From positions 248,001 through 312,000 of the IMG/VR virus record IMGVR_UViG_3300045970_000794: a stretch of 64,000 nt of DNA, one strand, 5' to 3'. A model generated the notes under the pieces. That model was not told the DNA's origin. It did no database searches and saw nothing but the letters and a program-made list of their open reading frames with translations. Below, piece by piece: positions 75-59,214 of the stretch (the first letter of the stretch is position 1; each line of letters begins with the position of its first letter). Made by a program: the position numbers and the translations under genes.

Positions 75-2144
75 CTATATTTCTCTTAACTTTTTATTAA
101 TATCCTCAATCATATTGTTGATATTATCATTAATCTTTAGGTTTTTATCCGAAATCTTAGTAGTATGTTCACGAATTAATTTATCTTCTGGCACTTGTGA
201 ATTGATTAATCGGTCCATATACATCGATTGATACTTTGATGTTTTAGCATCTAATTTTTCACTAAGCAATTTTTTTTGCTCAGCTAATAATTTTTCAGCA
301 TTCTTTAATAATATTCTGTTAGATTCACCAAATGCTGGGACTTCAGTATCTTCAGCACCAGCTTCACCGCCAGCTTCTGTATCAGCACCAAATTCAGTTT
401 CTGCACCAGCTTCACCACCAGTATCTTCACCACCTTCAACAGGGGTTTCATCACCGAATCCACCACCCCCGAAGCCGCCTCCACCGCCGCCTCCACTAGC
501 ACCAGCATCACCACCAGCTTCTTCACCACCACCAACATCTTCACCAGCAGCAATTTTTTCTAAAGCTTTAGGGTCACCATAAATGTTGTCAACTTTATCA
601 AAGAAACCAGTTTGTTTAATAATAGAAGCTGTTTTAGCAAGTTCAGCAGCCGCAGCTTTTTCAATCCTTTGCTCAAGTAAATCTTGTTTAATTTCTTCAT
701 CACTAAATCCTAGGATTTCTTTTTTAGCTTTTGTCATTGACATTGCTTGGAAACCATTACCAGAATCACCAACTGCATCTCTATATAACGTGATTTTTTG
801 TTGTAAATGTTCAATTTTCAACATCTCAGCTTGAGTTGATGGGTTATTAAGTGTTAGAATGAAATTATCCAATTCATCATCAAAACCTAAAATGTATAAA
901 TGTATGATGGCAATTTTATTTAATTCCATCAATATAGCTTGTTGTATACGGTTAATTGTTCTAGAGAAACGAATATCCATCAATGCTAAATTTTTACCTT
1001 CACCAATAGCAGCATCAAAACCTAAAAATGGTTTTGGAATACGTAAAGCGGTAAATAATTTATTCTGTAAATATTCAATATCAGCAATTTCAGATAAGTT
1101 TGATGCACCTGGTAACGTATCAATTGGGCTTGGTGCGTTTTCATCACGAACTGGAACGAAAATATCTTGGTCTTGCCCTAGTTGATTATACCTTAAATCG
1201 ATTTGCCCTGTTGCTGAATCAACAACTGGTAAACGTTTGAATCTACTTGCAATCTCATTAACATAAGCTGCAACATCATTATCATCAATGTTACCAACAT
1301 ATATCTTATAAATTCTACGTTCTGGAGCTCTAGTAACACGATAAATTAACATCGCATCTTCCGATAACAATAATTGTTTCCAGATTCTACGAGCTTTTTC
1401 AAGTACTGATGTACCATATGGTAATTTTCTATCATCACCTAATAATCTGAAATGCGCTATTTGCCATGAATTGAATTCAACATCTTTGGTTTTCCAATAA
1501 AACTTAATCTTATTATCATACTCAGTTTTAGTACTATCAGAACCCATTACACGACTTCTAGCCAATAACATGTTATATAAATCACCTTCTCTACGTTCCA
1601 TTTCGAAATTAGGCATTTGTCTAGCACCAATAACGCCACCTTTTTCATCAACATTTAAAAACACAAAGTTATCACCATATTTACAAAGATTTCTAGCCCA
1701 TGCTGGTAAATTAGTATGACAATCTAAACGATTGAAGAATAAATCTTCCAATATTGTTTTAACTCTACTACTTTCAGAATAAATGTTTAGAATTTTACCT
1801 TTATCATTAGGTGTTGTTGATTCTTCCATCATAATATCCAATGCGGCCGCAATTTCTGGAAAAAATTCCATAGATTCAAAGTCACTATAAGAACCAATTC
1901 TAGTTACTTCATAATGAATTGATTGTTGATACATTTCTCCATCAACTTTTTGCCATAATTGGCTAAGATAACGATTTTGTTGTGCTTGTGTCTTAGCTAC
2001 ATCATATTCTTGTTTGGATGAAGTTTTTATAATTTCATCACGCCCAATACTATAACGATTAGTTTTTTCTTGAGGAACTTTAACACCTTCTGGACCAAAT
2101 ACTTTATTTAATCGTTGAAATACAGTTAATTTTTTTTCTGCCAT
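75..2144 (-). CDS. Portal protein (T4 gp20-like)
   Basis: YRVTRAPERRIYKIYVGN and AxIEYLQNKLFTALRIP motifs of gp20-type portals; next to TerL; Gly/Glu-rich C-terminal tail. Confidence 0.9.
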   Translation of the reverse strand: MAEKKLTVFQRLNKVFGPEGVKVPQEKTNRYSIGRDEIIKTSSKQEYDVAKTQAQQNRYLSQLWQKVDGEMYQQSIHYEVTRIGSYSDFESMEFFPEIAAALDIMMEESTTPNDKGKILNIYSESSRVKTILEDLFFNRLDCHTNLPAWARNLCKYGDNFVFLNVDEKGGVIGARQMPNFEMERREGDLYNMLLARSRVMGSDSTKTEYDNKIKFYWKTKDVEFNSWQIAHFRLLGDDRKLPYGTSVLEKARRIWKQLLLSEDAMLIYRVTRAPERRIYKIYVGNIDDNDVAAYVNEIASRFKRLPVVDSATGQIDLRYNQLGQDQDIFVPVRDENAPSPIDTLPGASNLSEIADIEYLQNKLFTALRIPKPFLGFDAAIGEGKNLALMDIRFSRTINRIQQAILMELNKIAIIHLYILGFDDELDNFILTLNNPSTQAEMLKIEHLQQKITLYRDAVGDSGNGFQAMSMTKAKKEILGFSDEEIKQDLLEQRIEKAAAAELAKTASIIKQTGFFDKVDNIYGDPKALEKIAAGEDVGGGEEAGGDAGASGGGGGGGFGGGGFGDETPVEGGEDTGGEAGAETEFGADTEAGGEAGAEDTEVPAFGESNRILLKNAEKLLAEQKKLLSEKLDAKTSKYQSMYMDRLINSQVPEDKLIREHTTKISDKNLKINDNINNMIEDINKKLREI

Positions 2145-2190
2145 AATATCTTTTTTATTAATTATAATCTTTTTTTAAATAAAATAAAGA

Positions 2191-2436
2191 CTATTTTACG
2201 TAATCACATGCAACATATGCTGACCTGTGTGTTATCACACCAACCAAATATGTATTATACACATAACTATTTGTATTATCATCACCTTGTGAATATGCTG
2301 TCGCATCACAACCTGTTTTAGGCCTTACATGACCAGTTGTTTTAGCACTTTTATCACTATCACTTGGTTGCCATTGGTAAACATACCCACGAGTAGGGGT
2401 CCTACCAAATATTTTTTTACTCTTATCTAACGCCAT
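2191..2436 (-). CDS. Hypothetical protein between terminase and portal
   Basis: 81 aa ORF co-oriented in the packaging cluster, ATATTTATA motif upstream. Confidence 0.6.
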   Translation of the reverse strand: MALDKSKKIFGRTPTRGYVYQWQPSDSDKSAKTTGHVRPKTGCDATAYSQGDDNTNSYVYNTYLVGVITHRSAYVACDYVK

Positions 2437-2459
2437 ATTAATATTATTTAATATAAATA

Positions 2460-4244
2460 TTATCTCATACCACTAAATAACCATAAGTAATCACCTTTAG
2501 GGTCTTGCATATTCTTAGATACGATTGGTGTGAACTTAGGTTTATTCATTGGCGTTTTGCTACCTTTTGGAACAAAACCAGTATTATATTCATCAGTAGT
2601 ATTTTTACCACCATTAACAACCCAGCTTTTTAGCATCGCCTTAGCTTGATTCTGGACTTTTTCTAAATTTTTAAATGAATGTTCTAACACCCATAATGCC
2701 ATACCTAATGCCATTAATAAATCATCGTGATGACCTTTCATATGGTCTGGCCTACCGTCACGATAAACAAATGTTTTCATTTCGGATGTTAATCTGATTG
2801 AACGTATTTTAACTAAATTCTGTCGGATGCTTTGTTCCAAATGCCCGATTAATGGTAAACGTATTGAATTTACTACTAAACCTGGTTTCTTATCATCATC
2901 CATCACGTGTTTAGCCAAATCTTTTTGGTCTAATAATTTATTACGTTCACTATAATGGATATTTTTATATTTCACTTCAATCAACTTCAATACTGTTGAC
3001 ACACCCCAACCACCAGTAACGTCAACTACTACATATGCATTATACAATAACCCATACTCTTCAACTATTTTTGCTAATAAATCTGGTGGGACTTTACCAC
3101 GATATTCAGCTACTTCTTCCATTGTCGTAAAATCGATAATAACAAAAGTTGAAAAATCGTCACCACCACCACTGGATACGTCAACACCCATTATGTAACG
3201 ATGACCTTCAATTGGTTTTTCCCAAATCCAAATTTCTTTTTTAATACCAGATAGATATTGTGGTTCTTTGCAATTATTTTTAACGTGGAATTCAATAAAT
3301 TCATCATCAATAACCTGACCCCCAGAACCTAGAAATGATACATCTAATTCTTGAGCAATCATTCGTTTATCACCATTCATACCACGACACATTGCTTCGT
3401 ACCATGAAGAAGTTGGTTTATAACCCGTATCTAATTTACTTTTATAGCTTTCAAATGTGAATTCCATTTCAGTGATTACTTCCTCACCTTTTAACCATTT
3501 TAAATCAATATTATAACGGTTATCTTCATACCACTTCATTTCAACAACATTAAAGTCATTATCACCTTTTAGCGAACCATCATATGATTTCCAATACAAT
3601 TCATCGTAACCATTTGGTGTTGAAATTAATGTTGCTTTACCCCCAGTACCTAGCGATGTTAGTGCGGCTCCGAATACTTCATCACCATTATCAATAAACG
3701 CAGCTTCATCCATAACAAGATATGTAGGAGTAAAACCCCTCAACGCATCTTTAGATGTTGCAACCGCTTTGATTTCACATTTATTTGGTAACATTAATTT
3801 TCTATTGGAATCAACTAAGAATATTGATTTTGCTTCTTTTTCAGCATCACCATAATAATCTTCACCCCAAACCCATCTAGGTAATTGTAATAGAAAATCT
3901 TTAATTTTGGCCAAAAATTCTTCGGCCATATCTCTTTTATTTGCTAATATAAGTATTTTTTCTGGACTTTCATCACTAGCAAAACCAACTTTTATCGCTA
4001 AATAAGCCGCCGTTGTGGTTGAAACCCCAGCTTGTCTTGGTTTTGTTACTAAATTAAAACGATGTAATTCATACGCTTGAATTATTTGTCTTTGTCTTGG
4101 AAATAAATAGAATTGTACGAATCCACCCCTACCTTCATTATATGTTTTATCGAACGTCTTAAAATAAGTTTCGATAGCATACGTTGGATTCATCAAACAT
4201 TTAGCATATTCTTGTAATATTTCACCACTAGTTAAATTATTCAT
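2460..4244 (-). CDS. terL: Terminase large subunit (T4 gp17-like)
   Basis: Walker A KPRQAGVSTT, Walker B LVMDEAAF, coupling motif STPNG, nuclease GVDVS and HDDLLMA. Confidence 0.95.
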   Translation of the reverse strand: MNNLTSGEILQEYAKCLMNPTYAIETYFKTFDKTYNEGRGGFVQFYLFPRQRQIIQAYELHRFNLVTKPRQAGVSTTTAAYLAIKVGFASDESPEKILILANKRDMAEEFLAKIKDFLLQLPRWVWGEDYYGDAEKEAKSIFLVDSNRKLMLPNKCEIKAVATSKDALRGFTPTYLVMDEAAFIDNGDEVFGAALTSLGTGGKATLISTPNGYDELYWKSYDGSLKGDNDFNVVEMKWYEDNRYNIDLKWLKGEEVITEMEFTFESYKSKLDTGYKPTSSWYEAMCRGMNGDKRMIAQELDVSFLGSGGQVIDDEFIEFHVKNNCKEPQYLSGIKKEIWIWEKPIEGHRYIMGVDVSSGGGDDFSTFVIIDFTTMEEVAEYRGKVPPDLLAKIVEEYGLLYNAYVVVDVTGGWGVSTVLKLIEVKYKNIHYSERNKLLDQKDLAKHVMDDDKKPGLVVNSIRLPLIGHLEQSIRQNLVKIRSIRLTSEMKTFVYRDGRPDHMKGHHDDLLMALGMALWVLEHSFKNLEKVQNQAKAMLKSWVVNGGKNTTDEYNTGFVPKGSKTPMNKPKFTPIVSKNMQDPKGDYLWLFSGMR

Positions 4245-7466: not shown

Positions 7467-8018
7467 CTATTTTTTTAAATTTTTAACTTTAATGGTTTCA
7501 ACAACCTTTAATTTGGTATTCTTTTCAATCAATTCAAGTAAATCCTTCTTTTTCATTTTAGGATTAACTTCAGTGCTTTCACCGATTGAAGTTGCCAAAG
7601 TATCAGCTATCATGGTTTTTAATTTATTAAGAGTATTACCATCCATCTGCAATCTTTTAATAAATTCATTAGCTATCGCTAGTTTATCTTTAGGTGCTTT
7701 AGCATTATTAGCAATTGCAACTAATGGCGCATTTTTATCTAATAACATGAAGAATTTTTCTGCTACTTGTGTTAATCCACCGAATTCTTGTTGGTTACTA
7801 GTATCAGTCGCTTGAGCTGGTATATCAGTAGCTTCAGACATACCAAGTGAATTTGTCACTGGTTTTGAAGAAGAAGCGTTATCATCAACCACATGTATTT
7901 CAGTACCAGGTTTTACTTTACTCTGAACATCCTTTACATCATTCTTAGTTGCATATACTACATCCTTAGTATCAGCTTCTTTTAGTTTCAACTTTATCTT
8001 TTCCTGTATGTTTTTCAT
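7467..8018 (-). CDS. Hypothetical protein
   Basis: ATG at 8018 (MKNIQEK) preferred over TTG at 8039. Confidence 0.65.
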   Translation of the reverse strand: MKNIQEKIKLKLKEADTKDVVYATKNDVKDVQSKVKPGTEIHVVDDNASSSKPVTNSLGMSEATDIPAQATDTSNQQEFGGLTQVAEKFFMLLDKNAPLVAIANNAKAPKDKLAIANEFIKRLQMDGNTLNKLKTMIADTLATSIGESTEVNPKMKKKDLLELIEKNTKLKVVETIKVKNLKK

Positions 8019-8418
8019 TTTTACTATTATTAAAGTCAAGTATTATATCTTTTTCATATAATTTATTAGTTACTGAACTAATAGGTTCAGCGAATCTGAA
8101 ACACATTCTAATATCTGGATATTCATCATATTCAGATATATCTTCCCAACCTAACGCAATTACATTGTCTATCGCATCCCACACAGCAAATGTATCACTA
8201 TTTTGGATTAGATTTAACTTAATATCTGATACTAATATCCCAATTTTTTTAACTAAATCTGCTCTAGGTGGTTCTGGATTTCCAGCGGCTGGGTAAACAT
8301 CCCAATCAACACCATCAACATCACTAGTTTTATCCGAAAATAAAAATTCGTATCGATATTGCCCTTCCCAAGTTTTACCAACTTCATTAATATAAATTAA
8401 AAATAATTCAGATTCCAT
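7972..8418 (-). CDS. Hypothetical protein
   Basis: 148 aa; start overlaps upstream stop (TAATG). Confidence 0.7.
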   Translation of the reverse strand: MESELFLIYINEVGKTWEGQYRYEFLFSDKTSDVDGVDWDVYPAAGNPEPPRADLVKKIGILVSDIKLNLIQNSDTFAVWDAIDNVIALGWEDISEYDEYPDIRMCFRFAEPISSVTNKLYEKDIILDFNNSKNEKHTGKDKVETKRS

Positions 8419-9524
8419 TACTTAATACTTGCTTTTGGGTCTGGATTTTCCTTAATTCTAGGAACTTTCCATGGTTTATTTCTTCTTGTTGGTTGACTAT
8501 CTGGTTCTTTAGTCTTAGTGTCTGGTTCTTTAACTGGTGTTTCAATTTCTGGTTCACCATTATCACTAGTACTATTACCTAATAAACTAAATACTTCCTC
8601 AACTGTTTCAGTTAGAAAATTTGCTTTATTGAATTTATCCATAATGATTTTTTCAACAAAGGTACTATAATTTTCACCAATTGGCAAGTTTTCTGCAATA
8701 TTTTGTTCATACTCAATAACAACACCATCTTCAGAATTCTCAGTTATATTAAGAAATGTTTTTCTAAACCATTTATAACCATATGTAACATCACCCGAAA
8801 ATGAATATACTGCGATATCATGTTTTCCATTAGGATATTCAGCCCAAACATATTGGAATTTCTTAGGACCATCTTGTGTATTGATAGTGAATGGTTGCTC
8901 TGTACCGTAATCTTTTAAATAACCAACATACATTTCACCCATTGGGTCCTTAGCTTCTGGTTCTATCCCATCAACTATCATATTTTCTTCAACGTCAGCA
9001 TCATTTGGTAATGCCTCATCACCGCTAAATGAATCTTCTTTATCATTGGTTGGTTCATCTGGATTATCAGTAGGTTCTGAATTTTCATCACCTTGGCCAG
9101 CTGTCTTAATTTTTTTGATTATTTCGTTTTGGTCTTGTCCATCCATATCACCAGTATGTGTTGCGGAAACAACTGAATTAACAGCGAATTTTTCTAGCTC
9201 AAAATCTGGTTGACCTTGAGTTTCACTATATTTTCTCATTGTGGTACCTAATTTACCAGCTAATTGTTGAATGAATTTTTTAGGGTCACTATCTTCGTCA
9301 GCTTCAACGCCAGCGTCAAATGGTTCATCTTCAAATGGCTTATCACCACCGTCTTCAGAACCGCCACCAAAATCACCTAAATCTTCGGAATTGTCACCAA
9401 AACTTGGTTCAGCATCTGGGGTATTTTCTTCACCGCCAGACATAAAATCAGCTGAAGGTGGAGTATCAGACTTTACCTTCAGCTTATATTTTAATTCATT
9501 GAGTTCTTGGACGGACTCAACTAC
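8418..9524 (-). CDS. Acidic low-complexity protein, C-terminal part of a probable -1 frameshift fusion
   Basis: Frame stays open from 9524 (VVESVQELNELKYKLKVKSDTPPSADF) into the Met at 9443. Confidence 0.7.
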   Translation of the reverse strand, partial: VVESVQELNELKYKLKVKSDTPPSADFMSGGEENTPDAEPSFGDNSEDLGDFGGGSEDGGDKPFEDEPFDAGVEADEDSDPKKFIQQLAGKLGTTMRKYSETQGQPDFELEKFAVNSVVSATHTGDMDGQDQNEIIKKIKTAGQGDENSEPTDNPDEPTNDKEDSFSGDEALPNDADVEENMIVDGIEPEAKDPMGEMYVGYLKDYGTEQPFTINTQDGPKKFQYVWAEYPNGKHDIAVYSFSGDVTYGYKWFRKTFLNITENSEDGVVIEYEQNIAENLPIGENYSTFVEKIIMDKFNKANFLTETVEEVFSLLGNSTSDNGEPEIETPVKEPDTKTKEPDSQPTRRNKPWKVPRIKENPDPKASIK

Positions 9525-9535
9525 TTTTTTTTTTT
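9499..9535 (-). other. Candidate programmed -1 frameshift site A_AAA_AAG with 3' hairpin
   Basis: 11 A then G; TTGAGT-N10-ACTCAA stem starts 4 nt downstream. Confidence 0.6.
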
Positions 9536-10162
9536 AATATCATCAAGTGATTCGAAAACATCCTCGATACCTTTTGGTAATACATGCATATTGCAATAGC
9601 CACCATCATCTTCATTTATAGCTTTAGCTATTGATGAACTTCTAGATTCAGTTTGATAAGTTGAACCACATTCGTCACAATCTTCTTCTTTCTCATTTTC
9701 AAGCTCTTCAACAACTTCAGTTACAGTTTCTTCGTCATCACAAGCTTCTTCTTCATAAACTGGATTTTCTTGTTCCATGTTTAATAAATGTTCATTAGCG
9801 AATGTATTGATTTCACTAGTAATACCATAAGATTCAGCAACTACAATAAGTTTACCATTTAAACGTTTAAGTGCTTTCGCATATGTTGGATAGGATTCAT
9901 CATGTTTATTTTGTAATCCACCAATATATTGAAAATCTTCGGTAACTAATGGTCCTTTTTTCTGAGCAGCAATTTTAATGAAATAGTTGTGATTTTCTCT
10001 AACTATTGCATAGATTTTACCATCGGCAGCTTTTTTAGTTAATTCTACCACTGAATTTCTAACACTTTCATTTATAGGAGTTAATTTGTGCATTAAATCT
10101 TGAATATGTTGAAGTTGCTCTTTACCCTTTAAACCTACTGGGTTTATTCTGTTTTGATTCAT
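9521..10162 (-). CDS. Hypothetical protein ending in IKKKK, N-terminal part of a probable frameshift fusion
   Basis: Ends ATT AAA AAA AAA AAG TAG. Confidence 0.75.
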   Translation of the reverse strand: MNQNRINPVGLKGKEQLQHIQDLMHKLTPINESVRNSVVELTKKAADGKIYAIVRENHNYFIKIAAQKKGPLVTEDFQYIGGLQNKHDESYPTYAKALKRLNGKLIVVAESYGITSEINTFANEHLLNMEQENPVYEEEACDDEETVTEVVEELENEKEEDCDECGSTYQTESRSSSIAKAINEDDGGYCNMHVLPKGIEDVFESLDDIKKKK

Positions 10163-10240
10163 ATGTTTATCTTTTTTTAACCATTATTTTTTAATAAATA
10201 TCCTCATAGTAATAAATATATCGATTTTAGCTAATATTCA

Positions 10241-10514: not shown

Positions 10515-11300
10515 TTATTTATTTAATAAATATAGTGATTCATCCATAACTGTTATAGAATTGATTGAATCATATGCTCTATTTTTTAAATCTGTTAGTC
10601 TTTCTAGGTATTCACCACGCCTTAATACTTTAAAAACAATGTTTTCAATTGAGTATTCACCAGAATGGGTTAATCCTTTTTTTCTCATATCTTTAATCTT
10701 ATCCCAAAGTGGTTGATAAGCTTTCATTACATCATCATACTTTTCAGCCTTAAATAAATCCTCAATCTCATCAATCTCATCAATAATATCAGCAGCTTTC
10801 TGTTTCACAACTTCTTTATCGTATTTAGGCTTTTGTTTCTTAGGTTTTTTAATCCATTCATTATCTTCTAATGAATAAACACCACTAGCAACATGTGGCT
10901 CTTTATAATCTTGAGCGTATAATTCAACATCATAATCATTAACCGTTAAGTCGTGAAGGTCGTTCCAAGAATCTTTCTTTAATTTAAGATATTCTTTAAC
11001 TAAGTCAACATCATCATTAACATCTTTATAATCAATAATGACATGTAAATCAACATCCGAGAATTTGGACCAATTATAATTAGCTAAACTACCTGTTAAT
11101 CTAACATCTTTGATTTCAACCCATGGAATATCTAATGATTCAAAAAAATCATCAGCAATTTTCAATAATTGTTTCCTAACTTCTGGTCTGATTTTATTTT
11201 CAGTAGCCCAAAGTTTTGGATTCAATTTAGGTTTAATTTCAAATGAGTCCAAATTAACGTCTTCTGGATTTAATTTCTCCAATATTAAATGTTCTTTCAT
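10515..11300 (-). CDS. Nucleotidyltransferase (Pol-beta superfamily)
   Basis: GSLANYNWSKFSDVDLHV (GS..DxD) plus DVELY third acidic residue. Confidence 0.8.
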   Translation of the reverse strand: MKEHLILEKLNPEDVNLDSFEIKPKLNPKLWATENKIRPEVRKQLLKIADDFFESLDIPWVEIKDVRLTGSLANYNWSKFSDVDLHVIIDYKDVNDDVDLVKEYLKLKKDSWNDLHDLTVNDYDVELYAQDYKEPHVASGVYSLEDNEWIKKPKKQKPKYDKEVVKQKAADIIDEIDEIEDLFKAEKYDDVMKAYQPLWDKIKDMRKKGLTHSGEYSIENIVFKVLRRGEYLERLTDLKNRAYDSINSITVMDESLYLLNK

Positions 11301-44099: not shown

Positions 44100-44738
44100 A
44101 TGCCATATAAAGATAAAGATAAAGAAAAACAATACCAAAAGGAATACAGAGAAAAGAATAAAGAATATTTCGAAGAATATCGAAAAATACATAAATATAA
44201 AAATAATAAATCGTATCAGGAATATAGTGAAAATAATAAAGAATCGTCCAAAAAATATTATAAAACTAAGGATAAAATTGTATTACAAAAAAAAGAATAT
44301 TATGAAAATAATAAAGAAAAATTAAAGCAATCTCAAAAGGAATGGCGAGAAAATAATAAAGATTATACGAATAAAATTGCTCGTAATAAATATAAAACAG
44401 ACCCATTATTTAAACTTAAACGAAGTATAAGGCGTATAATTGCTTTCAGTCTTAAAAATAAAGGACTCAAAAAAACCAGTAGAGCACACCTTATTTTAGG
44501 CTGTTCTTTTAATGATTTTAAAACTCATATTGAATCGAAATTTGAATATTGGATGACTTGGGATAACTATGGTTTATATAACGGTACGTTAAATTATGGA
44601 TGGGATATTGACCACATTATACCATTAGCAACGGCAATAAATGAAGATGAAGTGATTAGATTAAATCATTATACTAATTTGCGACCATTATGTAGTCATA
44701 TTAATCGGGTAATAAAACGTAATAAAATTGTGTATTAG
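44100..44738 (+). CDS. HNH homing-endonuclease-like protein (paralog of 4761-5363)
   Basis: GLYNGT.NYGWDIDHII.LATA..E.....LNHYTNL.PLCS.IN shared with 4761. Confidence 0.75.
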   Translation: MPYKDKDKEKQYQKEYREKNKEYFEEYRKIHKYKNNKSYQEYSENNKESSKKYYKTKDKIVLQKKEYYENNKEKLKQSQKEWRENNKDYTNKIARNKYKTDPLFKLKRSIRRIIAFSLKNKGLKKTSRAHLILGCSFNDFKTHIESKFEYWMTWDNYGLYNGTLNYGWDIDHIIPLATAINEDEVIRLNHYTNLRPLCSHINRVIKRNKIVY

Positions 44739-58997: not shown

Positions 58998-59214
58998 CGC
59001 TATTTTTTTTAAAAGATAATTTACCAATCTTTTTAACTGGTGTACATACATCACACCTAGTATATTGTGTTTGTTCTAGGTCACCAGTATTATTAGGCTC
59101 ATGATTACCTTTACGTCCAATACCAATTGAGTAATTCTCACTTATTTTAATGAAAATATTTCCATTTGGTGACTCCCAAACATCATAAATGTCTAAATCT
59201 TTTTCTAGTTTCAT
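58987..59214 (-). CDS. Hypothetical protein
   Basis: 75 aa; follows P25. Confidence 0.6.
   Translation of the reverse strand: MKLEKDLDIYDVWESPNGNIFIKISENYSIGIGRKGNHEPNNTGDLEQTQYTRCDVCTPVKKIGKLSFKKNSDGK

What the first reader, a model, noticed from the sequence alone, without database searches (positions are those of the whole stretch)
8418..10162. Probable programmed -1 frameshift joining two head-cluster ORFs
Seen: ORF 9521-10162 ends in A11-G-TAG, which contains A_AAA_AAG. The -1 frame is open for 27 codons into ORF 8418-9443, and a TTGAGT/ACTCAA hairpin follows the slip site. This gives a 213-aa product and a fusion of about 580 aa. Established: A_AAA_AAG is the classic bacterial slippery heptamer (dnaX, IS elements); phage recoding is best known in tail chaperones and capsid genes. 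Inference: sets the stoichiometry of a scaffold-like protein. Transcriptional slippage on A11 is an alternative mechanism.
Basis: partly seen in the sequence, partly recalled or inferred. Interest (0 to 1): 0.75.

Follow-up and report, generated by a model that had tools for sequence, protein, structure and literature searches.

The report
Conserved poly-A recoding site in jumbo phages
Two neighbouring reading frames of an uncultured 362-kb T4-like phage are really one gene that is read into a short and a long protein by slipping on a run of eleven A's, and the same split at the same A-run is kept in more than a hundred distantly related phage lineages, so it is deliberate and not an error.

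Summary
ORF 10162..9521 (minus strand, 213 aa) ends ATT AAA AAA AAA AAG TAG. The A11 (9535..9525) is the longest homopolymer in the 362-kb genome. The -1 frame opens inside the run and continues through ORF 9443..8418.

Comparative evidence shows programmed recoding, not an error:
- Of 85 related loci, 79 are split at the same place.
- All 79 have a -1 relation and an A9-A12 run (mode A10).
- 102 of 119 ORF1-type cluster representatives end in KKK plus at most 8 residues.
- The codons between the run and the first ATG are conserved protein (KYKLK[LV] motif in 61 of 62 loci; about 20 loci have no ATG there).
- ORF2 is under strong purifying selection in split lineages.
- A few lineages are naturally fused and differ by exactly one A.

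The conserved feature is run length. It is not an in-frame A_AAA_AAG heptamer (at most 5 of 62) and not a flanking hairpin (no enrichment). I therefore favour RNA-polymerase slippage that adds one A, as in Citrobacter tssM1. Ribosomal -1 slippage may contribute or be the alternative.

The hairpin is clade-local, and 12 or 9 A's, not 10 or 13, would give a continuous ORF. Protein function is unknown. This is a new member of a known kind.

The parts
9521..10162 (-). ORF1 (0 frame), 213 aa. It has an N-terminal globular domain and an acidic linker, and ends IKKKK-stop. This is the short product.
   Evidence: The family holds 762 clusters at E<=1e-3. The start has the genome's usual A-rich leader.
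9773..10153 (-). Conserved N-terminal domain of ORF1 (residues about 4-130).
   Evidence: Alignment A1. In the AlphaFold model of the natural fusion P0007 it has pLDDT 87-97 and folds as helix, 3 strands, helix. No informative fold match.
9525..9535 (-). A11 tract: the slip site.
   Evidence: It is the longest homopolymer in the genome. The same length is seen in contigs of two samples. The homologous tract is A9-A12 in 62 of 62 non-redundant split relatives. Elsewhere in these genes only 2 of 52 KKK tripeptides are encoded as A9.
9524..9530 (-). A_AAA_AAG heptamer in the 0 frame.
   Evidence: It is in frame here and in L003 and L006, but in at most 5 of 62 relatives.
9521..9523 (-). 0-frame stop (TAG), directly after the heptamer.
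   Evidence: In relatives the 0-frame stop lies 1-6 nt after the run in 48 of 62 and is mostly TAA, so TAG reassignment is not the explanation.
9534..9536 (-). TAA that closes the -1 frame just upstream, confining any shift to the run.
9444..9533 (-). Junction segment in the -1 frame upstream of ORF2's first ATG (KKK + 27 codons). It is translated only after the shift.
   Evidence: It aligns to uninterrupted homologs P0039 and P0007. Differences between relatives in the run-to-motif stretch (part of this segment) fall preferentially on the third codon position, 323/353/577.
9474..9491 (-). KYKLKV motif, preceded by L-N-E.
   Evidence: The motif occurs after the run in 61 of 62 split loci and lies upstream of the first ATG in 42. 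[LIVM]xE ends 0-3 aa before it in 60 of 61 loci, against 15% background.
8418..9443 (-). ORF2 as called from its first ATG (341 aa). It is the C-terminal part of the long product.
   Evidence: Its ATG lacks the genome's A-rich leader.
9096..9338 (-). Highly conserved central helical domain (PFDAGVEADE...FIQQLAGKLG...LEKFAVNSV.SATHT...).
   Evidence: Alignment A2. Mean amino-acid identity is 75% and codon-position differences are 17798/9673/44028 among 52 split loci. The model shows a three-helix unit at pLDDT about 76-82.
9498..9521 (-).
   Evidence: It is kept, with some two-sided changes, in the 4 close relatives. No enrichment across the family.
9450..9484 (-). Stronger hairpin, AGCUGAAGGU/ACCUUCAGCU, ending 6 nt before ORF2's ATG.
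   Evidence: 80 nt fold: -24.3 kcal/mol, z -5.9. The arms are nearly invariant in the 4 close relatives. Its role is unknown.

Best explanation
ORF1 and ORF2 are one gene of a T4-like jumbo phage, and it is expressed as two proteins.

Short product. Standard decoding gives the 213-aa protein: an N-terminal globular domain plus an acidic linker, ending KKKK.

Long product. A fixed minority of expression events shifts into the -1 frame on the conserved poly-A tract. This gives a protein of about 581 aa that adds the KYKLKV segment, the conserved central helical domain and the C-terminal PTRRNKPW...PDPKA motif.

Mechanism. The most likely step is RNA-polymerase slippage on the A11/T11 tract. This adds one A to part of the transcripts (A12), which are then translated normally. 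In this phage, -1 ribosomal slippage on A_AAA_AAG next to UAG may add to the yield.

What is shown and what is inferred:
- Shown: one gene, an obligatory shift, a conserved site, and selection on the downstream part.
- Inferred: the level at which the shift occurs (RNA polymerase or ribosome), the ratio of products (by analogy about 3-4 short to 1 long) and the protein's role.
For: (1) Some homologs are single ORFs spanning both parts.
- P0039 (648 aa) aligns to ORF1 at 43% identity and to ORF2, including the pre-ATG codons.
- P0007 (505 aa, 70% identical to ORF1) has the junction DDIKKK-NLAENTQELDEIKYKLKV.

(2) The split is conserved.
- The closest relatives L003/L004, L005 and L006 (58-70% identity, other samples) carry A11-G-TAG or A10-GTC-TAA at the same codon.
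- Of 85 loci, 79 are split. All have a -1 relation; none has +1.
- 102 of 119 N-only cluster representatives end in KKK plus at most 8 aa.
- The split state covers the whole tree.

(3) The downstream part needs the shift.
- KYKLK[LV] follows the run in 61 of 62 loci and precedes the first ATG in 42. About 20 loci have no ATG before the central domain.
- ORF2 is under purifying selection in split lineages.

(4) Run length is the conserved element.
- Run lengths are A10 in 50 loci, A11 in 6, A9 in 5 and A12 in 1, and never below 9.
- Only 2 of 52 other KKK tripeptides in the same genes are encoded as A9.
- An in-frame A_AAA_AAG occurs in at most 5 of 62 loci.
- No 3' or 5' structure is enriched.
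- Nine nucleotides is the RNA:DNA hybrid length used in slippage analysis (PMC5574713) and the run length at which selection against slippery runs becomes evident in many bacterial genomes (PMC1088944).

(5) Natural fused alleles differ by one extra A and keep the hidden GTC-TAA stop.
- Examples are L089 and L040/42/48 with A11, and L087/88 with A10 in the other phase.
- Within one lineage, A10 split (L095/96) and A11 fused (L040/42/48) coexist with ORF2 intact.
- This mirrors Citrobacter tssM1 (A11, 20-25% slippage, both forms needed) and Yersinia tssM3 (in-frame run, short form made by slippage) (PMC4256274).

(6) Insertions predominate in transcription through A/T runs (PMC5574713). This matches the exclusive -1 (= +1 A) arrangement.
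Against: - There is no RNA or protein evidence. No RNA run was listed, and the DNA evidence is at contig level only.
- Every run of 9 or more A's also contains an in-frame A_AAA_AAA heptamer, so ribosomal -1 slippage is never excluded.
- The window's own clade has the optimal A_AAA_AAG followed by a stop, plus a small 3' hairpin kept in 4 relatives.
- The host (probably Bacteroidota-like) and the polymerase that transcribes this gene are unknown, so slippage rates are extrapolated from E. coli, Citrobacter and Thermus.
- Homopolymer lengths in short-read assemblies can be wrong by one. A systematic error cannot, however, produce 79 -1 cases and no +1 case.
Confidence: 0.58

Rival explanations
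1. A purely translational programmed -1 ribosomal frameshift. Ribosomes slip back one base on A_AAA_AAG (A_AAA_AAA in most relatives), helped here by the adjacent UAG and the small 3' hairpin. The mRNA carries A11 only.
For: - The heptamer is in the 0 frame, and the overlap is confined to the run.
- The direction is always -1.
- Hairpin 9521..9498 is kept in the 4 close relatives, with a few two-sided changes.
- A_AAA_AAG is among the most efficient E. coli shift motifs (PMC4066793).
Against: - Seven nucleotides would be enough, yet no relative has fewer than 9 A's and the mode is 10.
- In-frame A_AAA_AAG occurs in at most 5 of 62 loci.
- In most lineages one sense codon separates the run from the stop, so a 'shifty stop' is not general.
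- No 3' structure is enriched.
- There is no SD-like 5' element, and the genome does not use SD at all.
- The window's hairpin starts only 2-3 nt after the heptamer.
Confidence: 0.27
2. A DNA-level phase-variable (contingency) homopolymer. Replication slippage switches genomes between split and fused states, and the long protein is made only by the fused subpopulation. There is no recoding.
For: - Fused and split alleles that differ by one A occur at least three times on the tree and within one lineage.
- Long A/T runs are hypermutable (PMC1088944).
Against: - The split state is the assembled majority in 79 of 85 loci.
- Only one of the two possible out-of-frame states is ever seen: 0 of 79 are +1.
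- ORF2 is under strong purifying selection in split lineages.
- The fused state is stable across 8% nucleotide divergence.
- Two samples of this phage show the same A11.
Confidence: 0.07
3. Two independent genes. ORF2 starts at its own ATG (9443) or at a nearby alternative start, and the A-run is only the lysine-rich end of ORF1 or an A-rich leader.
For: - Other A8-A9 runs between genes in this genome are A-rich leaders 5-15 nt before the next ATG.
- The genome uses A-rich leaders instead of SD.
Against: - Here the first ATG is 81 nt after the run and lacks the A-rich -14..-10 context.
- The 27 intervening codons are conserved protein and align to fused homologs.
- About 20 relatives have no ATG before the central domain.
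- The Leu codon of the motif is never ATG.
Confidence: 0.04
4. A broken gene (recent frameshift mutation) or an assembly error in a homopolymer.
For: Homopolymers are error-prone, and some homologs are uninterrupted.
Against: - The same interruption occurs at the same codon in 79 loci from many samples and in over 100 clusters at 50% identity.
- The length is identical in two samples.
- ORF2 shows no decay.
Confidence: 0.02

Closest known systems
Citrobacter rodentium tssM1 / Yersinia pseudotuberculosis tssM3 (transcriptional frameshifting on poly-A; PMC4256274)
   Same: - A run of 11 A's lies just before a stop.
- Adding an A to the mRNA restores the frame.
- A truncated and a full-length variant come from one gene.
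- A relative has the run in frame, so slippage there gives the short form. This matches the A10-split and A11-fused alleles seen here.
   Different: - Those are bacterial secretion-system genes, and poly-A sites are rare among tssM genes.
- Here the site is the rule across a very large phage protein family.
- Slippage, product ratio and requirement were measured there and not here.
Thermus thermophilus dnaX (A9 transcriptional slippage) and E. coli dnaX (A_AAA_AAG -1 ribosomal frameshift), as described in PMC1088944
   Same: - Two products share an N-terminus.
- A stop lies close to the run.
- The pair shows that the same outcome can arise at either level of readout on an A-rich site.
   Different: - In dnaX the standard product is the long one and the shift gives the short one.
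- E. coli dnaX has an SD-like 5' element and a strong 3' stem-loop (from general knowledge). Neither is conserved here.
IS-element orfA-orfB fusions made by A-run slippage (PMC1088944; Roseiflexus IS630 in PMC5009743) and Shigella mxiE/spa13 (PMC5009743)
   Same: Two overlapping ORFs are fused through a run of about 9 A's or T's, and the run is conserved among copies or homologs.
   Different: - Those are transposase or regulator genes.
- A nascent-RNA hairpin stimulates slippage in IS630, but no upstream hairpin is enriched here.
Phage lambda G/GT tail chaperone and T7 gene 10A/10B capsid frameshifts (general knowledge; G/GT in PMC5009743)
   Same: A phage morphogenesis-region gene gives a major short product and a minor C-terminally extended product at a set ratio.
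   Different: - Those use short heptamers and ribosomal slippage.
- The gene here is neither a tail chaperone nor a capsid protein by any search run.
- It sits upstream of TerL and portal, not between tail tube and tape measure.

Membership tests
Programmed transcriptional slippage sites | Homopolymeric A or T run of about 9 nt or more at the junction of the two frames | tested here: met
   A11 at 9535..9525. All 62 non-redundant split relatives have A9-A12.
Programmed transcriptional slippage sites | Adding or removing run nucleotides joins the frames | tested here: met
   A12 or A9 gives a continuous 581-aa ORF. Natural +1-A alleles are fused.
Programmed transcriptional slippage sites | The run is conserved in homologs against synonymous drift | tested here: met
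   62 of 62 loci have at least A9 at the site, against 2 of 52 KKK tripeptides elsewhere in the same genes.
Programmed transcriptional slippage sites | mRNA population heterogeneous in run length while the DNA is homogeneous | not testable with these tools
   No RNA run was listed. The DNA was seen only as contigs.
-1 programmed ribosomal frameshift sites | X_XXY_YYZ heptamer in the 0 frame inside the overlap | tested here: met
   A_AAA_AAG at 9530..9524. Relatives have A_AAA_AAA, and an in-frame A_AAA_AAG occurs in at most 5 of 62.
-1 programmed ribosomal frameshift sites | Conserved 3' stimulatory structure about 5-9 nt downstream | tested here: inconclusive
   A weak hairpin at 9521..9498 starts 2-3 nt after the heptamer and is kept in the 4 close relatives. 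There is no enrichment family-wide: median z is -0.41 and the percentile test gives p 0.37-0.78.
-1 programmed ribosomal frameshift sites | 5' SD-like stimulator (dnaX/IS type) | tested here: not met
   None lies upstream. SD-like tetramers sit before only 3% of ORFs, which equals background.
-1 programmed ribosomal frameshift sites | Trans-frame protein made from an unaltered mRNA | not testable with these tools
   No proteomic or RNA data are available.
Phase-variable contingency homopolymers | Length polymorphism among close genomes | tested here: met
   L095/L096 have A10 (split) and L040/42/48 have A11 (fused) in one lineage.
Phase-variable contingency homopolymers | OFF states in either frame, and relaxed constraint on the downstream part when OFF | tested here: not met
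   0 of 79 split loci are in the +1 state. ORF2 is under strong purifying selection in split lineages.
Tail assembly chaperone G/GT-type frameshift | Position between the tail tube and tape-measure genes, with chaperone homology | tested here: not met
   The neighbours are thymidylate synthase, an NTase-like protein, TerL and portal. There is no family hit.

The most novel reading that the evidence does not exclude
The poly-A tract may be an evolvable stoichiometry dial for a prohead-associated protein, used across a whole, so far uncultured clade of about 350-kb T4-like jumbo phages of SD-less (Bacteroidota-like) hosts.
- A10-type alleles would make mostly the short form, and A11-type alleles mostly the long form.
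- Lineages would switch between the two by one-base changes.
- The invariant [LIV]-x-E just before KYKLK would be a cleavage site for the phage's T4-type prohead protease. The ORF1 part would then act as a scaffold-like propeptide that loads the conserved C-terminal part into the head and is then cut off.
Probability: 0.15. Interest if true: 0.75.

Novelty: new member of a known kind. Interest (0 to 1): 0.6.

Why it matters
- Annotation. Every gene call seen for this family splits the gene or starts the second half at an arbitrary internal ATG, so hundreds of jumbo-phage records misannotate it.
- Breadth. This would be an unusually broad case of poly-A-run recoding: over 100 clusters at 50% identity. 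In bacteria such sites are mostly sporadic (tssM, mxiE, IS copies).
- A natural experiment. The family offers many run lengths and phases, plus paired split and fused alleles. These can be used to separate RNA-polymerase slippage from ribosomal slippage, and to ask how the product ratio is tuned in hosts that do not use Shine-Dalgarno pairing.
- A target for study. It marks an abundant, conserved protein of unknown function beside the head and packaging genes, suited to virion proteomics.

Tried and rejected
- GenBank phages hold no DNA or protein relative of either ORF. A single-protein scan of IMG/VR with ORF2 also failed; an alignment query worked.
- Stop-codon reassignment is rejected. Reading TAG through hits TAA ten codons later, and most relatives use TAA.
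- Function searches found nothing usable. These were Pfam, PHROGs, NCBIfam, PDB profile searches, ESM Atlas features, VIA-align against PDB (best Z 5.8) and BFVD (only uncharacterised Myoviridae proteins). The AlphaFold model is confident only for the N-domain, the central three-helix unit and one C-terminal helix.
- Rfam gave no match near threshold.
- A family-wide 3' stimulator is not supported. Neither is a 5' nascent-RNA hairpin.
- Other A8-A9 runs between long ORFs in this genome (genome 355849, 346574, 223919, 78254, 292287, 307003) turned out to be ordinary A-rich leaders 5-15 nt before the next ATG.
- On the plus strand, hairpin 9499-9520 followed by T11 scores as terminator-like. No plus-strand gene ends there, so I treated it as a by-product of the same sequence.
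- RNA runs: none was listed, so transcript heterogeneity could not be examined.
- DNA for the closest fused homolog P0007 is not held.
- The 190-aa ORF 7467-8039 is shorter than its 370-aa L003 homolog but is intact at both ends, so it is not a second split gene.
Full report
**What is in the sequence**

The window is bases 248,001-312,000 of a 362,102-bp IMG/VR virus record with direct terminal repeats. It is a 30% GC jumbo phage.

On the minus strand, ORF1 (10162..9521, 213 aa) ends ATT AAA AAA AAA AAG TAG. The run is A11 (9535..9525). ORF2 (9443..8418) lies in the -1 frame. That frame is closed by TAA at 9536..9534 and open from 9533. After KKK it carries 27 sense codons before the first ATG. 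The two frames therefore overlap only across the run.

A continuous ORF would need 12 or 9 A's.

The A11 is the only homopolymer of 11 or more in the genome. Contigs from two pond metagenomes cover it without any difference or gap. That is contig-level evidence only, and one of the samples is probably the source of this record.

**One gene, not two**

A search with the stop-to-stop ORF2 frame found 562 relatives. A full HMMER scan with ORF1 found 762 clusters at 50% identity.

Some relatives are single proteins that hold both parts:
- P0039 (648 aa, from a 352-kb contig) aligns to ORF1 at 43% identity. It also aligns to ORF2, including the codons upstream of ORF2's ATG.
- P0007 (505 aa, 70% identical to ORF1) reads DDIKKK-NLAENTQELDEIKYKLKV across the junction.

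**The interruption is conserved**

The three closest relatives come from other samples and are 58-70% identical in ORF2. They are split at the same codon: A11-G-TAG in L003/L004 and L006, and A10-GTC-TAA in L005. All have a -1 relation.

I fetched 80 IMG/VR loci with an alignment of the N-domain and scored the junctions by script.
- Of 85 loci holding both domains, 79 are split. Every one has a -1 relation and an A-run in the short overlap. Six are fused.
- In 62 non-redundant split loci the run is A10 in 50, A11 in 6, A9 in 5 and A12 in 1.
- The 0-frame stop follows within 1-6 nt in 48 of the 62 and is usually TAA.
- Among cluster representatives, 102 of 119 proteins that hold only the N-domain end in KKK plus at most 8 residues.
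- On a tree of the N-domain the split state covers all major branches.

**The downstream part needs the shift and is under selection**

- A KYKLK[LV] motif follows the run in the -1 frame in 61 of 62 loci. It lies upstream of the first ATG in 42 of them.
- About 20 loci have no ATG at all before the central domain.
- Differences between relatives in the segment between run and motif fall mostly on third codon positions, 323/353/577.
- In the central domain of 52 split loci the codon-position counts are 17798/9673/44028, with 75% mean amino-acid identity.
- The genome does not use Shine-Dalgarno sequences: 3% of ORFs have an SD-like tetramer, which equals background. Instead it has an A-rich signal at -14..-10.
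- ORF1's ATG has that leader and ORF2's ATG does not.

Independent initiation, a pseudogene and an assembly error are therefore all poor explanations.

The conserved feature is a run of at least 9 A's.
- An in-frame A_AAA_AAG, which this phage has, occurs in at most 5 of 62 relatives. Most read TTA AAA AAA AAA Gxx TAA.
- Elsewhere in the same genes, 50 of 52 KKK tripeptides are interrupted by AAG.
- No structure is enriched 3' of the run. The median z over 60 nt is -0.41, and percentile tests against the same genes give p 0.37-0.78.
- No structure is enriched 5' of the run either (median z -0.10).
- There is no SD-like element.

The literature fits this pattern.
- Nine nucleotides is the RNA:DNA hybrid length used in slippage analysis, and insertions predominate at A/T runs (PMC5574713).
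- Nine is also the run length at which selection against slippery runs becomes evident in many bacterial genomes (PMC1088944).

A heptamer would be enough for a ribosome, so the missing 7-8-nt runs argue for RNA-polymerase slippage that adds one A.

Ribosomal -1 slippage cannot be excluded.
- Every run of 9 or more A's contains A_AAA_AAA in frame.
- The window's clade has A_AAA_AAG followed by UAG, plus a small hairpin (9521..9498) kept in its four members with some two-sided changes.

I put about 0.9 on programmed recoding as such. Within that, I put roughly 0.6 on the RNA polymerase as the main source and 0.3 on the ribosome.

**Natural one-A variants**

Fused alleles that keep KKK also keep a long run. 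They differ from split alleles by one A, and most retain the hidden GTC-TAA stop in the other frame (L090 does not).
- L089 (P0039) and L040/42/48 have A11 in phase 2.
- L087, L088 and L090 have A10 in phase 0.

They occur in at least three places on the tree. Within one lineage, A10 split (L095/96) and A11 fused (L040/42/48) coexist with ORF2 intact.

A second kind of fused relative has no run at all. L043 reads AAA AAG AAA, and 20 representatives have no KKK.

This mirrors Citrobacter tssM1 and Yersinia tssM3 (PMC4256274). In tssM1 an A11 run gave 20-25% frameshifting and a truncated-to-full-length ratio of 3-4 to 1, and that ratio mattered for function.

Pure DNA-level phase variation is unlikely for two reasons. 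Only one of the two out-of-frame states is ever seen, and ORF2 stays under selection in split lineages.

**What the protein is**

Function is unknown. Pfam, PHROGs, NCBIfam, PDB, the Atlas and fold searches gave nothing usable.

The AlphaFold model of P0007 shows three ordered parts separated by long acidic disordered linkers:
- a confident N-domain (helix, three strands, helix),
- a three-helix central unit,
- one C-terminal helix.

The gene lies on the same strand and just upstream of a T4-type head module. That module holds TerL (2460-4244), portal (75-2144), a Peptidase_S77 prohead protease and a gp23-type capsid protein. 'Head cluster' is therefore a reasonable description, but 'scaffold-like' is untested.

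An [LIVM]-x-E ends 0-3 residues before KYKLK in 60 of 61 loci, against 15% background. T4-family prohead proteases cleave after Glu at short x-X-E motifs, and giant-phage head proteins can carry propeptides of more than 100 residues (PMC5694885). This suggests cleavage at the junction, but it is only a lead.

**Verdict**

- It is a new and very widespread member of a known kind.

Noticed in passing
window 9474-9491, and the same motif in L003-L086: The KYKLK[LV] motif has odd codon use. Its last Lys is AAG in 54 of 61 loci, against 21.6% AAG gene-wide. The final Leu is CTG in 19 of 61, although CTG is about 0.4% of Leu codons in these genes. The middle Leu is often TTG or CTG. This points to a nucleotide-level constraint that I could not explain.
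   Followed up: partly
window 9450-9484: A 10-bp stem, AGCUGAAGGU/ACCUUCAGCU, ends 6 nt before ORF2's first ATG. The 80-nt fold has z -5.9. The arms are nearly invariant in the four close relatives despite loops of different length. It lies too far from the run for a classic frameshift stimulator, and its role is unknown.
   Followed up: partly
whole genome (G000); for example window 10163-10185 upstream of ORF1: No Shine-Dalgarno use: 3% of ORFs of at least 150 aa have an SD-like tetramer, which equals background. There is instead a strong A-rich signal at -14..-10. The closest cultured portal relatives include Flavobacterium phages. The host is probably a Bacteroidota-like bacterium.
   Followed up: partly
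window 44287-44294 and 59003-59010; genome 355849-355857, 346574-346582, 223919-223926, 78254-78261: Other A8-A9 runs between long ORFs in different frames look like the finding at first sight. They are A-rich translation leaders 5-15 nt before the next gene's ATG.
   Followed up: yes
window 75-4244; genome 242111-246100 (L091, L092, L094): A T4-type head module lies on the minus strand: TerL, portal (Portal_T4, E 1e-74), a Peptidase_S77 prohead protease and a gp23-type major capsid protein. A second short gp23-like match lies at genome 52615-52761.
   Followed up: partly
L095/L096 compared with L040/L042/L048: One phage lineage (95% identical N-domain) has an A10 split allele in two runs and an A11 fused allele in three IMG/VR contigs. 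The downstream part is intact in both.
   Followed up: yes
window 8418-8422: ORF2's stop overlaps the start of the next gene (TAATG; the 148-aa ORF 8418..7972). Translation of that gene could be coupled to ribosomes that have shifted. Relatives have a 3-7 nt gap instead.
   Followed up: no
window 10515-11300: A conserved neighbour (phrog_36119, E 2e-47) has weak nucleotidyltransferase-fold matches to Polbeta and the MTPAP-like palm domain, at E about 1e-3 and below Pfam's thresholds. The synteny thymidylate synthase, this gene, an 80-aa gene, then the split gene is kept in relatives.
   Followed up: no
alignment A2 (P0015, P0048, P0068 and others): The part of the protein after the central domain is modular and differs between lineages. 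Some carry a Cys-containing CW.GYKQ.GMK.K.GK.VPNCVP motif. Some match PHROGs of unknown function, such as phrog_727 and phrog_38880. Only the final P.R.NKPW...PDPKA motif is shared.
   Followed up: no
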